A stretch of DNA of 62,688 nt, filler included, from Bipalium vagum (lineage: Eukaryota): the NCBI GenBank assembly GCA_037834085.1. It is 3 parts of 3 records of this genome, joined end to end, with 100 filler letters (N's around TTAATTAATTAA, not from the genome) between each part and the next. Parts side by side here need not be neighbours in the genome. Positions count along the whole stretch, not along the records: positions 29,392 to 46,491 come from JBBMKC010078432.1; 2 more parts are not named here. The stretch is one strand, 5' to 3'. Shown here piece after piece: positions 38,671-43,100 of the stretch. The notes beneath the pieces are model-generated. The model was not told the DNA's origin, made no database searches, and saw nothing but the letters and a program-made list of their open reading frames with translations. Numbering within the stretch: the stretch's first letter is position 1; every line of letters begins with the position of its first letter. Position numbers and translations under genes: made by a program.

Positions 38671-38929
38671 GGTTTTATATATATAACGGTTTTATTAATT
38701 TATCAAACACTTTTGCAGTTTTATATTGAGCACAACTTATCATTAAAAGTACATGTTAAATTGTAAATATTAAAAAAAACTTATTTGATTGATGAAGAAC
38801 TGAAAAGAATAGTTATAATGTTTCAAAAAAAATATTTGAATAGATTTTATGTTAATTTGATAAAAGGGGTTTATTTGAAAAGAAAATTGATTCTGATCAT
38901 AAGATTAAGATTGTTAGTTGAAAATTAAT

Positions 38930-38950
38930 CGGGGATACCTGGATTAAAAT
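38930..38950 (-). pseudogene. 3' part of tRNA-Ala-like sequence (T-loop, T-stem, acceptor strand), copy 1
   Basis: Minus strand ATTTTAAT-CCAGG-TATCCCC-G, then ATTAATTTT. Confidence 0.65.
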
Positions 38951-40133
38951 GTACAAAATTTTATTTAAAAAAACAAGTCTTCTTTCAAGAACTTAATCGT
39001 ATGCACATAAATGTACACCTATTATGGCTTTCTTTATTATTCATTTTGGATAAGGTTGTCATCGCATTCGTCAAGATCTTCATCAGCATCATCTGACGGG
39101 TATTGATTTTGATTGTCATTGAGATTTTCATCTTCAATTTGGTGGAGATCGGAGAAGTTTACTGATGGTTTCTCAACATCTCTGTGAAATTTCCATTGCG
39201 CAGCACTCCAGTTTATATTTCAAGAAACACAGAATTTTCGTTATTTGTACTTTGGAAACTGGAGACTTTAATATTTCTTCATTTCGCTTTTATCATGATC
39301 TAAGGCAGCCGACTGCGAATGTGTCTAATTGAACAGTTCAATTTGGTAGGGCTTTCTTGGTCTAGTCGCGAAGATCTTGATAGTGAATGAGATTTTTCTC
39401 ATGATTTCAGAAGTTTTTTCTCTGTATTATACGGACATTTGATGTTAATAAGGTACATGACTTTGTGGTCTGTGAACGCAATCTGAAGGTCAACACGTTT
39501 TGTTGAATTGACGTACTGACTTTCAGCTTTGACAAAGACTGGCCTTTGGATTTTCTTTAATTTGCTTGATCAATTATTTTGGGATCGAATTATACCGACA
39601 GTTTTGGAATATTTTTAACGGAATGCAATTGACAAGAACATAAAACAATTTCTCTTCTTGCTCATTGCATCTTCGGCATCAACGGAATTTTAAGCCATGA
39701 TGAGCATTTATTTGGATATAGTAGGATTTAGCTCGGTGAGTGAAATATCAAGCTGCGATTGATATTTCACAGTTGAAAATTGGAGTAGTCGATAATGTTG
39801 ATTGGCCAATTGCCGATGCAAAGCGACCTGCACTTGCTTGGCTGTTCGAGCTGTGATTCCAAGCATGATTGATTAGATTGTGAAGCTTTTTCAATACAAC
39901 TTTTGCATCAATTGGCTCTCTATTTGCTTTATTCTCTTAACTTGAATCTAGATGTTGAAACAGTTTCAGATAGATTCCCTGTTCATTGCACTGGAATTTG
40001 ATATTGATCTTGTGTCTGGATTGCATTTGGTTGATTGCAGATCGAGTCTTCCTCCAACAACAATTCTGAAGACATTGTATGTCATCACGATTAAGTTATT
40101 CGAAAGCTTGATAGAGTGTAGCTCGGTTGAACA
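38951..40133 (-). mobile_element. 5'-truncated non-LTR retrotransposon (R2/NeSL type: CCHC knuckle plus restriction-like endonuclease), copy 1, pseudogenised
   Basis: CRRCNEQEEKLFYVLVNC knuckle, KRVDL, IKCPY, VGCLRS* (VGCLGSW-like); ends AATAAAATTTTGTAC; colinear with 58984-60140. Confidence 0.88.
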
Positions 40134-40181
40134 GACCGTTCAAATGCGCATGGAATGCTCTGACCTCTGAGCTACATTCCC
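40134..40181 (-). pseudogene. 5' part of tRNA-Ala(CGC)-like sequence, copy 1
   Basis: Minus strand GGGAATG-TA-GCTC-AGAGGTCA-GAGC-A-TTCCA-TGCGCAT-TTGAA-CGGTC. Confidence 0.8.
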
Positions 40182-43100
40182 CGACTAATGTTCAATTTAT
40201 CTGACAAAGATTATTAAATTATATTGAAAAGAATTATCACTTAATCAATTATTTATTTTATGATTTTATATTTTATTTTATTTGTTTGATTTAAATACAA
40301 TTATTTAATTTTTAAAATTATATTAAAGAATTGAACAGTACAACTTTGACAAAAAAAGACATGAAAATATAAATAATTTTACTAATCACAGAAATGTATA
40401 GACTGGAGCACAAGTCGCCCTGTTCTCCTCTATCATTATATAAAAATTCATACTAATCTCTGCTAATAACAATCAATTAAAAACAGCATACTAATAGTCT
40501 CTAAAAGGTTTCGTTCAGACACAGAAATAGAAAAGAAGTATGTTTTAATTTATTACGTTATTATCAAACAAAAATTCAGTAAAAAATTTTAAAAAATGAT
40601 TGATCTCTTTTTCATTATTTTGTTTTAAATATCAATTTATAATAATTATCTGTAAAATAAAAAATGACAACTGAACTCTTGAATAACCCGAAACCTGAGA
40701 TGAATATATTCTATCTGGGTTATATTCATTATATTAATTAATGATTTTATTATACAAGATATTATTGAAAATTTGAACTTTTTTTCCATTTATAAATATT
40801 TTAATAAGTTTATTTTCTTTTGTAAACTGATTATTTGTTCGCTTATTGATTTTTATGCTAATTATATTTTAATAAAAATATATTCATTGTCAATGTATAT
40901 TCTATATAAAATAAGTCAATAACAAGTGAATTTAATAATAAACAGATTTAGGTCAATCCTCAGTCAATTGGGACAAGAGAACATCTCTAGGGGAGCAGCT
41001 GCGTAGACAGAAATAATAAAAAGATTTTTCAGTTGCTCGATATGTATTAACTCGTGACATTATTAAAAGCATGGATTAGCTTTCATTAATTTGATAACGA
41101 TATTTAACAAAATATTGATATCAATAAAACAAAATAAGTGAATTATAATTTATCATAATGATGATATTATTAAGTTCGAAAATCTTTGAAAGAAATTTCG
41201 TCTTATAGCCCAAAAAGGAAAAGAAAATCATTATGAAGTTTTTATAATCACAGAGATTGAGAGAGGTGTGTAATCATTTAAACAAAAAATATATTTTCAT
41301 AAATTGTGTATGTGACCCAAGTAAGCATTTTAAATGGGTTTTTCTGTTTTAATTATAAAGGTTTTATATTTAAAAATATTTTCTGAATTTAGGTTATATT
41401 ATAAGTACATTATAAAGGGTACCAGACTAAAATTATTCATATTAAAATAATTTTAAAAATTTTATGAAATTTATAATGAGAAAATGTAAAAATATCGTCT
41501 GTCTATACACATGATAATAATTTTAATCCAAAGTCTTGAAGAATCATGGATAATATCAATCTGTATTGGTTCTCTATTTTTAATTCTTAAAAAATAATTT
41601 ACGTTCGATAATATTTTAGTTTAATAATAATATGAATATATATGATAAAAACACTATTTGATTGGATTGGTTTTTCAGAGGATTCTGAGATAGATCAAAT
41701 CACTGAAGTTGACATATATCCCATACCCTAAAGAAGATCAACTCTAGCATAATGAACAAACCCAAATGAGATCCAACTTTTCTTTATTTTATTTTTATTT
41801 TAAGTATTATTATTATTGCTCAATCATATCTTTACAAGTTAATAATTTTATTATTTTTTTATTACACAATTTTGTTTTAAAGAAAATGATTAACCCTGAT
41901 GATAAAAAGTCATTTATTTTTTCATTCAAAACAATTATTGCGTAATTTTATTTTATATATAATTTTTTAAAAATAAAATAAAATTTTCTTTTTATATTAA
42001 TTTTGTGAGAGTGAAAATATTATATTTTAAAAGTTGTGATATATTTATTTTTAAACTAAAATATTAAATATTTTTGTAAAAAATTGGATCATAATACTTC
42101 CTCTTATTTATCACGCATATCATGAATATTCTTTATTTTTCAACACTTCGGATAATTTTTAGAAAATATTTTATTTATTCCTGTATAATAATTATTAATT
42201 TAATTTCCATAATTTCATTAGCTCTATGAAATTATAATTACCTGAGTAACATTTTAAAAGAACAAGCTTTCAAATAATGAAAATAACATTAATAATCTCC
42301 GTGAAATTTAATTTCCTGATTGATAATAAAATCAAGTTCTCTGTAAAATATATGAAACTGTGTGAAACAACTTCTTTTTCTGTTAATTTTATTTTATTTA
42401 TTAAATTGTTTCAAATAAAATATCAATTTATATTTTCAAACCATTCTAGTGACTGCTAATGTTATGTGTCAGGTTGTTGAATTGGAAATGTGATTTTCAA
42501 GATATAGTTAAAGATATCAAAATATATTTTTATAGATTTTTTTGAAAAATGCATAAATAATATATATTCAAATAGTTTGTTTAAACAAATGAATAAATTT
42601 TCTTTATTGCAGGTAATTAAAAAGGCTCACTTTCAATACATATATACCTAATACTTTCCAATTGTAAAATAGAAATTATTTAAAATTTATAAAAATCCAA
42701 ATAACAAAAGAAATCATTTATCTTATTATCACTTGTTCCAAAAGTAATCCTTTGATTTATTTCGTTTTTATTTACATCTATTGATAGAAGTTGTTTTTTA
42801 ATTAGATATAACATTTAAAATCAAATTAAAATTAAAAAGAATATTGCTTCTTATTTTTATAATTATTATTAATAAAACTCAACAAAAATTTTATTATTGA
42901 TTAAAATTTATTTTAAAGTAAAAACATTACAAAAAAATTTAATAAGAATTTTATTAATTAAAAATTTCAGGAAGACATCAGCTCGTATTCCAAAATTTTT
43001 GTAATTCTAATTTTTTTAATGTTTTTGTCTTCATTAAATTTTAACTGAAATCAAAATTAAATCATTGATACTCTAAGAAATTTCTTGCTCGAAGAAAAAA

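What the first reader, a model, noticed from the sequence alone, without database searches (positions are those of the whole stretch)
38907..40211. Possible two-tier system: a site-specific LINE using a mobile landing pad, or a composite that moves as one unit
Both tRNA units in this 63-kb window are occupied by the same LINE family, and I saw no empty unit. Two readings are possible. (a) The mini-element disperses decoy or safe-harbour targets that the LINE fills independently. (b) One filled unit kept its TGT...ACA ends and was then moved as a 1.3-1.5 kb composite, with copy 1 later losing ~280 nt via the GGTC microhomology. In both readings the insertion separates the Pol III A-box from the B-box by more than 1.1 kb, which should silence the cassette.
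Basis: inference. Interest (0 to 1): 0.8.

Follow-up and report, generated by a model that had tools for sequence, protein, structure and literature searches.

The report
Interrupted tRNA-like mini-transposon in a planarian
A tiny mobile element built around a tRNA-Ala look-alike, apparently present in thousands of mostly intact copies in a flatworm genome, is here split by a decayed 1.2-kb repeat of uncertain class; the nesting is real, but a dedicated "LINE plus landing pad" system is not shown.

Summary
The structure is real. On the minus strand the order is: 25-nt arm, 48-nt tRNA-Ala-like 5' part, 1188-nt insert, 16-nt tRNA 3' part, 18-nt arm. Adding the 9 nt found in uninterrupted copies gives an ARAGORN tRNA-Ala(CGC).

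Contigs of one sequencing run from the same organism (a planarian, by a GPCR 75% identical to Schmidtea mediterranea GCR085) show many uninterrupted units. Their flanks differ from 38912 outward. So the pad is a mobile, high-copy mini-element, and empty pads far outnumber filled ones.

The "LINE" label is weak:
- No domain or homologue was found.
- No reading frame stands out.
- The only positive signs are a CX2CX8YX4C motif and an A-rich strand.
- The insert has a significant 33-nt subterminal inverted repeat, which a LINE should not have.

I could not test whether the insert family targets the pad or whether the composite moves as one unit. The second copy lies outside my piece, and no other copies could be fetched. 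Tx1L in Tx1D is a known precedent for a LINE that uses a mobile pad. Interest is moderate to low.

The parts
38907..38911 (.). Target-site duplication AAGAT, left copy
   Evidence: Identical 5-mer directly outside both ends. Chance of a 5-mer match is about 0.003-0.004.
38912..38929 (-). 3' arm of the mini-element (minus strand ATTAATTTTCAACTAACA). It ends in ACA on the minus strand, read as TGT on the plus strand, and holds a T4 run six nt after the tRNA end.
   Evidence: Inverted repeat with the other arm. 67 contigs of run X1 lose similarity exactly at 38912 and have unlike flanks, agreement 0.41. T4 run at 38924.
38930..38945 (-). tRNA-like 3' part: end of the T loop, 3' half of the T stem, 3' acceptor strand and discriminator (AATCCAGGTATCCCCG)
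   Evidence: ARAGORN cloverleaf of the rejoined unit. At 38933 and 38940 nearly all other contigs read A and G, which gives U70 (G3:U70) and a perfect T stem in most other copies.
38946..40133 (-). 1188-nt insert: a decayed member of a moderately repeated family of unresolved class. GC is 36% against 25% in the flanks, and the minus strand is A-rich (37% A).
   Evidence: Contigs 80-88% alike cover all of it. Composition. No Pfam hit in any frame. No homologues.
38974..39014 (.). Left arm of the subterminal inverted repeat inside the insert
   Evidence: 38982-39014 pairs with 40106-40072: 31 of 36 columns, score 39, 0 of 500 shuffles reach it, best internal background 25. CAAG/CTTG extends it to 38974/40109 across a 4-nt indel (read from the sequence).
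40072..40109 (.). Right arm of the subterminal inverted repeat inside the insert
   Evidence: (I1).
39625..39678 (-). CRRCNEQEEKLFYVLVNC: a CX2CX8(Y)X4C motif that resembles the C-terminal zinc knuckle of L1/Tx1-type LINE ORF2, with Y in the place of H
   Evidence: Translation. The first named hit in the ESM atlas is a zf-RVT cluster at 0.85, a lead only. Pfam zf-RVT itself does not hit.
39040..39219 (-). Open stretch ending in an acidic tail (…DDADEDLDECDDNLIQNE) followed by two stops, in the same frame as the CCHC-like motif. About 90 nt of non-coding sequence with an AATAAA at 38965-38960 follow.
   Evidence: This frame has 12 stops in 352 codons, but two other frames have 13 and 14.
40134..40181 (-). 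tRNA-like 5' part: acceptor strand, D arm with the A box (40174-40164), anticodon arm (CGC) and variable loop ending in GGTC
40182..40206 (-). 5' arm of the mini-element (minus strand TGTCAGATAAATTGAACATTAGTCG)
   Evidence: Inverted repeat with 38912-38930. It begins TGTCA, the TGTNR pattern (PMC2836005).
40207..40211 (.). Target-site duplication AAGAT, right copy

Best explanation
This is a nested transposable-element insertion.

The host element is a mini-transposon of about 116 bp. It consists of a tRNA-Ala-derived Pol III-type cassette (A box, B box, T4 run) between two short inverted-repeat arms. Its ends follow the TGTNR pattern of Gypsy-integrase-type elements, and it made a 5-bp target-site duplication (AAGAT) when it landed here. 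The family is very abundant in this planarian genome, and nearly all copies are uninterrupted.

In this copy a 1188-nt member of a second, much less abundant repeat family sits in the T arm, between the variable loop (…GGTC) and the T loop (AATCC…). Nine nt of the T stem and B box are missing or garbled. The insert is now non-coding.

The insert's class is unresolved. I put a 5'-truncated L1/Tx1-like LINE tail at about 40%, a non-autonomous element with inverted-repeat ends at about 30%, and a mosaic or something else at about 30%.

Shown: the anatomy, the duplication, the arms, the abundance of empty units, and the repetitiveness of the insert. Inferred: mobilisation of the pad by an integrase- or transposase-type enzyme, the order of events (pad first, insert later), and loss of Pol III activity. 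Not shown: any preference of the insert family for the pad.
For: - Split tRNA halves that rejoin into a tRNA-Ala cloverleaf.
- 5-bp AAGAT duplication and inverted arms.
- TGTNR ends with a 5-bp duplication match Gypsy-LTR and TDD-type integrase products (PMC2836005).
- Run X1 contigs: joints from 38945 to 40134-40145 with 2-13 nt between; 59 and 27 contigs that run on from 38945 and 38949 with CGAACCCGGGACC…, an uninterrupted T arm; 67 contigs that diverge exactly at 38912; summed word depth 27,000-78,000 on the unit against 15-50 on unique flanks and 500-3,100 on the insert.
- Most other copies read G3:U70 and a perfect T stem, which fits derivation from a true tRNA-Ala. So the short form is the original and the 1.3-kb form is derived.
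- The insert differs in composition from the flanks.
Against: - Only one filled copy could be examined.
- The tool warns that summed contig depth is not a copy number.
- The right-hand boundary (40206) rests on the duplication and the arm alignment, not on contig ends.
- The junction can be read in two ways: as a 9-nt target deletion, or as a decayed duplication of about 10 nt (TGTTCAACC on one side, TTTTAATCC on the other, against GGTTCGAATCC).
- The subterminal inverted repeat lies 28 and 24 nt inside the junctions, so the insert's true ends are not certain.
Confidence: 0.6

Rival explanations
1. Reader's reading (a). The insert family is a sequence-specific LINE whose endonuclease cuts the T arm of the tRNA-like unit. 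The dispersed mini-elements then serve as a mobile, harmless landing pad, as Tx1L uses Tx1D.
For: - The pad is mobile and abundant, and empty pads exist, as such a system needs.
- The insert lies inside the most conserved part of the unit.
- If its sense is the minus strand, it has the same orientation as the tRNA, as is usual for LINEs that target RNA genes.
- It has a CCHC-like motif of L1/Tx1 type, and the atlas lead is zf-RVT.
- Precedents exist: Tx1 in Tx1D, and Tx1-Mar in Mariner-N4_AMi (PMC4494074).
Against: - No RT, endonuclease or any homologue was found.
- No frame is clearly coding.
- There is no A tail or terminal simple repeat.
- A significant subterminal inverted repeat is not a LINE feature.
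- One filled pad among thousands is also expected from random nesting.
- The junctions of other copies were not seen.
Confidence: 0.17
2. Reader's reading (b). One filled unit kept its TGT...ACA ends and was mobilised as a 1.3-kb composite by the enzyme that moves the mini-element. The filled copies would then be a clonal subfamily.
For: - An intact 5-bp duplication flanks the whole composite, and both arms are retained.
- This copy carries rare variants of the unit (G at 38933, T at 38940). Other contigs share them at a summed depth of about 430 and 2,900, which is nearer to the insert's depth than to the unit's.
- Two insert-like contigs end at 40116 and 40124, close to this copy's junction.
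- One contig shows an internal deletion that keeps both ends, 39199 joined to 39994.
Against: - The duplication would look the same if the pad landed first and was filled later.
- The shared rare variants could be a small empty subfamily, or error words at a depth of 78,000.
- Contig ends in a word-graph assembly have many causes.
- No second composite was seen.
Confidence: 0.15
3. The insert is not a LINE. It is a non-autonomous cut-and-paste element, or a foldback-type repeat with inverted-repeat ends, that landed in the pad either by chance or with a Dada-like preference for tRNA sequence.
For: - The subterminal inverted repeat 38982-39014 / 40106-40072 is well above chance.
- An internal-deletion variant keeps both ends.
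- There is no coding signal.
- Dada transposons lack terminal inverted repeats but have subterminal ones, and they sit inside tRNA genes (PMC3706591).
Against: - The repeat arms are 28 and 24 nt inside the junctions.
- No duplication flanks them.
- Dada subterminal repeats are about 7 nt, Dada duplications are 6-7 bp, and Dada-tA sits in the anticodon loop, not the T arm.
- No transposase remnant was found.
Confidence: 0.25
4. The 1.3-kb element is the parent, and the 116-bp units are its internal-deletion derivatives (MITEs).
For: The same ends and arms occur in both forms. MITEs usually arise in this way.
Against: An internal deletion would not recreate a complete tRNA-Ala cloverleaf with G3:U70 and a perfect T arm, as most uninterrupted copies have.
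Confidence: 0.04

Closest known systems
Tx1L in Tx1D (Xenopus) and Tx1-Mar in Mariner-N4_AMi (crocodilians): Tx1-clade LINEs that insert at one site of a non-autonomous DNA transposon (PMC4494074)
   Same: A dispersed, mobile, non-autonomous TIR element carries a second repeat inside it, and both empty and filled pads coexist.
   Different: Here the insert is not shown to be a LINE or to be site-specific. The pad is built round a tRNA-like cassette and has TGTNR ends with a 5-bp duplication, so it is neither a piggyBac nor a mariner derivative.
Dada DNA transposons that target tRNA and snRNA genes (PMC3706591)
   Same: A foreign element sits inside a tRNA(-Ala)-type sequence. Both have subterminal rather than terminal inverted repeats.
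   Different: Dada-tA sits in the anticodon loop and makes a 6-bp duplication. Dada subterminal repeats are about 7 nt, and a DDE transposase defines the family. None of this is seen here, and the target here is a mobile pseudo-tRNA, not a tRNA gene.
tRNA-derived SINEs (SINE2)
   Same: A high-copy dispersed repeat with a tRNA-derived A-box/B-box head.
   Different: The unit has no body or LINE-like tail. It ends 18 nt after the tRNA, has inverted-repeat arms with TGT...ACA ends, and made a fixed 5-bp duplication at this locus. These features point to integrase- or transposase-type insertion, not target-primed reverse transcription.
Ginger/TDD DNA transposons and Gypsy LTR ends (PMC2836005)
   Same: TGTNR termini on both ends. 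The 5-bp duplication matches TDD-4/TDD-5 and many Gypsy elements.
   Different: Ginger TIRs are 40-270 bp, and metazoan Ginger2 makes 4-bp duplications. No integrase-encoding partner was identified. Here the arms are only 19-25 nt, or about 30 nt if the acceptor stem is counted.
Dictyostelium TRE5/TRE3 and yeast Ty3 (tRNA-gene targeting)
   Same: Association of retroelements with Pol III genes.
   Different: Those elements insert at a distance upstream or downstream of the gene through TFIIIB/C contacts. They do not insert inside the tRNA sequence (PMC3706591, discussion).

Membership tests
Non-LTR retrotransposon (LINE), for the insert | Reverse transcriptase (and endonuclease) coding sequence or a recognisable remnant | tested here: not met
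   No Pfam hit in 20 open stretches of both strands. Exhaustive HMMER with the longest stretch found only low-complexity bacterial repeat proteins. Two word-based searches found nothing. A 1.19-kb 3' fragment need not contain the RT, so this does not exclude a LINE tail.
Non-LTR retrotransposon (LINE), for the insert | C-terminal CCHC zinc knuckle of ORF2 (L1/Tx1 type) | tested here: inconclusive
   CX2CX8YX4C at 39678-39625. The ESM atlas's first named hit is zf-RVT at 0.85, below the level the tool treats as evidence. Pfam zf-RVT does not hit.
Non-LTR retrotransposon (LINE), for the insert | One sense strand with an open or decayed ORF; A-rich sense strand | tested here: inconclusive
   The minus strand has 37% A. 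The frame carrying the motif has 12 stops in 352 codons, but two other frames have 13 and 14.
Non-LTR retrotransposon (LINE), for the insert | No inverted repeats at the ends; 3' A tail or short tandem repeat | tested here: not met
   Significant 33-41-nt subterminal inverted repeat. The 3' end reads …AAATAAAATTTTGTACATTTT, with no tail.
Non-LTR retrotransposon (LINE), for the insert | Variable 5' truncation with a constant 3' end among copies | not testable with these tools
   Only a summary of contigs was available. No other copies could be fetched.
Target-specific LINE with a mobile pad (Tx1L/Tx1D type) | All or most copies sit at the same position of the same target sequence | not tested
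   One copy is in the piece, and the junctions of other copies were not visible.
Target-specific LINE with a mobile pad (Tx1L/Tx1D type) | The target is itself a dispersed mobile element, and empty copies exist | tested here: met
   Duplication, arms, unlike flanks from 38912 outward, and many uninterrupted units.
MITE / short TIR element, for the pad | Terminal inverted repeats | tested here: met
   TGTCAG…TTGAACATTAGTC against TGTTAG…TTGAAAATTAATC, 16 of 19 with one gap. Blast and the repeat finder give 18 nt at 89% including the acceptor stem.
MITE / short TIR element, for the pad | Target-site duplication of fixed length | tested here: met
   AAGAT on both sides at this locus (p about 0.003-0.004). 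Fixed length across copies was not tested.
MITE / short TIR element, for the pad | High copy number at unrelated loci | tested here: met
   121 contigs cover 38933. 67 lose similarity at 38912 and have flanks with 0.41 agreement. Summed depth is about 78,000 against 15-50 on unique sequence (the tool cautions that depth is not a copy number).
Ginger/TDD or Gypsy-integrase-type ends, for the pad | TGTNR termini and a 4-5-bp duplication | tested here: met
   TGTTA and TGTCA ends, with a 5-bp duplication (pattern from PMC2836005).
Ginger/TDD or Gypsy-integrase-type ends, for the pad | Long TIRs (40-270 bp) and an integrase-encoding autonomous partner | tested here: not met
   The arms are 19-25 nt. 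No partner was identified. The neighbouring Ty3/gypsy fragment shows that such enzymes exist in this genome, but it does not link them to the unit.
tRNA-derived SINE, for the pad | tRNA head followed by a body and a LINE-related or A-rich tail; duplications of variable length | tested here: not met
   The unit ends 18 nt after the tRNA and has inverted arms.
Functional tRNA-Ala gene | Intact cloverleaf with G3:U70 | tested here: not met
   No tRNA is called at the locus. After rejoining, this copy has G3:C70 and an A4·C69 mismatch. Most other copies read U70.
Dada DNA transposon, for the insert | 6-7-bp duplication, a family-specific site in a small-RNA gene, a DDE transposase | tested here: not met
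   No clear duplication at the junctions, a T-arm site unlike Dada-tA, and no transposase remnant.

The most novel reading that the evidence does not exclude
A planarian genome holds a two-layer system. The first layer is a tRNA-Ala-derived Pol III cassette packaged as an integrase-type mini-transposon (TGTNR ends, 5-bp duplication), which has spread to thousands of sites. The second layer is a repeat family, possibly a Tx1/L1-like LINE, that inserts specifically into the T arm/B box of these units. The second family would then colonise a self-renewing set of harmless targets, or ride on the pad's own mobility.
Probability: 0.15. Interest if true: 0.6.

Novelty: new variant of a known kind. 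Interest (0 to 1): 0.35.

Why it matters
If the insert family proved specific for the unit, this would be a further case, in a flatworm, of a retroelement using another mobile element as its safe harbour, as Tx1L uses Tx1D. It would have a new twist: the pad is a pseudo-tRNA, so the target would be the most conserved Pol III promoter element.

Apart from that, a tRNA-Ala copy that spreads with inverted arms, TGT...ACA ends and a 5-bp duplication is an unusual way for a tRNA-derived repeat to multiply. Such repeats normally spread as SINEs. This unit would inflate tRNA-pseudogene counts in planarian genome annotation.

As it stands, the locus is one nested insertion, which is ordinary.

Tried and rejected
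- tRNA and Rfam scans of the piece found no tRNA at the interrupted locus.
- Pfam on 20 open stretches of the insert, both strands, found nothing.
- Word-based protein search with the 62-aa and 60-aa stretches found no candidates.
- Exhaustive HMMER with the 62-aa stretch gave five hits. All are bacterial repeat or Ig-like proteins matched in several stretches, so I rejected them as compositional.
- Two exact-pattern scans of metagenome contigs for the unit found nothing.
- Stop counting does not single out a frame, so I dropped the claim of one decayed ORF.
- Three features do not exceed shuffles or are too short, and I treat them as unproven: a possible second, inverted tRNA 5' fragment at the 5' junction (GAGTGTAGCTC at 40114-40124 pairs with 40169-40179), a unit-like stretch at 39771-39861, and a long T-arm target duplication.
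- Dada membership was rejected on site, duplication and repeat length.
The only joined sequence was the 116-nt tRNA-like unit with 9 nt taken from empty copies, used for one ARAGORN test.
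Full report
**Setting.** The usable piece (29392-46491) is AT-rich, with 17-35% GC. It carries:
- a GPCR-like ORF (29524-30477) that is 75% identical to Schmidtea mediterranea GCR085;
- a mariner-type remnant with a Mos1 HTH and 31-nt inverted ends (33076-33587);
- a decayed Ty3/gypsy RNase H-integrase stretch (about 37300-38690, plus strand).

So the source is a planarian related to, but not identical with, S. mediterranea. The sequencing run that holds the locus has a coded name (organism A, run X1). One of its contigs matches 40048-40700 without a single difference.

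**Anatomy.** I read the element on the minus strand. In order it consists of:
- AAGAT (40211-40207);
- a 25-nt arm beginning TGTCAG (40206-40182);
- 48 nt of a tRNA-like 5' part, with acceptor strand, D arm and A box TAGCTCAGAGG, anticodon arm with CGC, and a variable loop ending GGTC (40181-40134);
- 1188 nt of foreign sequence (40133-38946);
- 16 nt of a tRNA 3' part, AATCCAGGTATCCCCG (38945-38930);
- an 18-nt arm ending CTAACA (38929-38912);
- AAGAT (38911-38907).

The TGT and ACA ends sit 5 nt inside them. A 5-mer match at two given places has a chance of about 0.003-0.004 in this sequence.

The two arms are inverted repeats, 16 of 19 matches with one 5-nt gap. They run on into the self-complementary acceptor stem, so blast and the repeat finder report 18 nt at 89%. 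Both ends fit TGTNR, the terminal pattern of Gypsy LTRs and Ginger/TDD transposons. TDD-4/5 and many Gypsy elements make 5-bp duplications (PMC2836005).

**Is it a tRNA?** ARAGORN and Rfam find no tRNA in the piece as it stands. I joined the two halves with the 9 nt (CCGGGTTCG) that uninterrupted copies carry at that place. ARAGORN then calls a 73-nt tRNA-Ala(cgc) with all four arms. This copy has G3:C70 and an A4·C69 mismatch. At 38933 and 38940 nearly all other contigs read A and G. On the tRNA strand these give U70, which makes the alanine identity pair G3:U70, and a perfect CCGGG/CCCGG T stem. The family therefore descends from a real tRNA-Ala. A T4 run lies six nt after the tRNA end, inside the arm, so the unit carries a whole Pol III-type cassette.

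**The unit is a mobile, abundant repeat, and empty units dominate.** I laid the contigs of run X1 on 38400-40700 at 80% likeness or more. The results were:
- At least ten contigs jump from 38929-38950 to 40134-40145 with 2-13 nt (in one case 32 nt) between. These are uninterrupted units.
- 59 and 27 further contigs match up to 38945 or 38949 and then continue with CGAACCCGGGACCTTTCAAATGCCCATGGA…, which is the missing T arm followed by the anticodon arm.
- 67 contigs lose similarity exactly at 38912. Their continuations agree only 0.41, so they lie in different flanks.
- Summed word depth is about 27,000-78,000 on the 3' part of the unit, 500-3,100 along the insert, and 15-50 on the unique right flank.

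The tool warns that summed depth is not a copy number, so I take these figures only as orders of magnitude: thousands of units, tens to perhaps a hundred-odd insert copies, and filled units a few per cent at most.

**The junctions.** By the tool's alignment the insert replaces nine nt (CCGGGTTCG) of the T stem and loop. The B box is thus broken, not just displaced. A second reading is possible. TGTTCAACC directly after GGTC, and TTTTAATCC at the other junction, both resemble GGTTCGAATCC, so they could be decayed copies of a target duplication of about 10 nt. I cannot decide between the two readings.

**What is the insert?** It differs from its surroundings (36% GC against 25%), and its minus strand is A-rich. 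Contigs that differ from it by 12-20% cover its whole length, so it belongs to a repeat family.

In favour of a LINE tail:
- One minus-strand frame carries CRRCNEQEEKLFYVLVNC. This is the CX2CX7-8HX4C knuckle of L1/Tx1-type ORF2 with Y in the place of H. That comparison rests on my knowledge of the motif, not on a test.
- 195 codons further on in the same frame there is an acidic tail and a double stop, followed by about 90 nt with an AATAAA.
- The ESM atlas puts a zf-RVT cluster first for the motif stretch, at 0.85, which the tool itself calls a lead only.

Against a LINE tail:
- No Pfam domain hits in 20 open stretches of both strands.
- No homologue turned up in two word-based searches.
- The exhaustive HMMER search gave only compositional hits to bacterial repeat proteins.
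- The motif frame has 12 stops in 352 codons, and two other frames have 13 and 14.
- There is no A tail.
- Most important, 38982-39014 and 40106-40072 form an inverted repeat: 31 of 36 columns, score 39, 0 of 500 shuffles reach it, and the best inverted match between internal windows scores 25. It extends to 38974/40109, and lies 28 and 24 nt inside the junctions. LINEs do not have such repeats. Non-autonomous cut-and-paste elements do, and Dada elements have short subterminal ones.
- One contig shows an internal deletion that keeps both ends (39199 joined to 39994), which is typical of the latter kind.

I therefore leave the class open: LINE tail about 40%, element with inverted-repeat ends about 30%, mosaic or other about 30%.

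**The two-tier idea.** The pad half of it stands: the tRNA unit is a mobile element. The other half needs the junctions of many insert copies, and I could not get them. The reads tools were limited to one call each. Protein look-ups found no relatives, and two metagenome scans for the unit found nothing.

One filled pad does not discriminate between the readings. Thousands of 116-bp units make up a few hundred kb of target, so random nesting of younger repeats should interrupt some of them.

There are weak hints for a clonal composite:
- The rare unit variants of this copy (G at 38933, T at 38940) are shared by other contigs at summed depths of about 430 and 2,900, nearer to the insert's depth than to the unit's.
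- Two insert-like contigs end at 40116 and 40124, near this copy's junction.

Error words at very high depth, and the habits of word-graph assemblies, can explain both hints. The intact AAGAT duplication fits both 'pad first, filled later' and 'composite moved'.

**Comparison with what is known.**
- A LINE that uses a mobile element as its target is established for the Tx1 clade: Tx1 in the non-autonomous piggyBac Tx1D, and Tx1-Mar in Mariner-N4_AMi (PMC4494074).
- Elements sitting inside tRNA genes are known for Dada DNA transposons. Dada-tA sits in the anticodon loop and makes a 6-bp duplication (PMC3706591).
- The TRE elements of Dictyostelium insert near tRNA genes, not in them.

So the concept would be a new variant of a known kind, not a new kind.

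The pad itself is the less usual part. tRNA-derived repeats normally spread as SINEs, with a tail and duplications of variable length. This one has inverted arms, TGTNR ends and a 5-bp duplication, which points to an integrase- or transposase-type enzyme. I did not find it described in the papers I could search. A stringent survey of S. mediterranea lists only 457 tRNA genes (PMC7962491), but repeat libraries such as Repbase were not available to me.

**Verdict.**
- The LINE label is doubtful.
- Empty pads are the rule.
- Site-specific filling and composite mobility are both untested.
- My best reading is an ordinary nested insertion into an unusual, very abundant tRNA-Ala mini-transposon.

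Noticed in passing
window 38708-38784: This AT-rich stretch, between the gypsy fragment and the element, has a summed contig depth of about 14,000, so it is another high-copy repeat. One contig joins 38752 directly to 38910, two nt before the unit's TGT end. It is unexplained. It could be a second repeat that often neighbours the unit, or a longer variant of the unit.
   Followed up: no
window 39740-39770: A perfect 12-bp hairpin (GTGAAATATCAA / TTGATATTTCAC) with a 7-nt loop, GCTGCGA, lies inside the insert. It is preceded by TAGGATTTAGCTCGGT, an A-box-like stretch 81% like 40112-40127, and followed by AGTTGAAAATT, an exact 11-mer of the unit's arm. A unit-like alignment over 39771-39861 is reached by 18 of 200 shuffles. 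This may be an older, decayed unit inside the insert, or chance.
   Followed up: partly
window 40114-40124 and 40169-40179: An 11-nt inverted match (GAGTGTAGCTC / GAGCTACATTC) links the first bases of the insert to the acceptor/D-arm of the tRNA 5' part, and gives a hairpin in the DNA fold. The fold's z-score is only -1.4. I could not tell whether it is a junction artefact or chance.
   Followed up: partly
window 33076-33587: A mariner-type remnant with 31-nt inverted ends that are 94% complementary, and an ORF with a Mos1 HTH domain (PF17906, E 2.8e-13).
   Followed up: partly
window 37300-38690: A decayed Ty3/gypsy-type fragment on the plus strand. RT_RNaseH domains lie at 37819-38290 (E 3e-17), followed by integrase-like motifs. 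It is broken by stops and frameshifts and is cut off near 38690, about 220 nt before the unit. It is multi-copy in run X1. I only described it.
   Followed up: partly
window 29524-30477: A single-exon GPCR-like ORF, 75% identical over its full length to Schmidtea mediterranea GCR085 (441 aa). It has no Pfam hit. It is the basis for calling the source a planarian.
   Followed up: partly
window 30754-31324: A 34-nt inverted repeat that is 82% complementary, with arms 503 nt apart and TGTATACA at its inner ends (I4). It may be another short TIR element.
   Followed up: no
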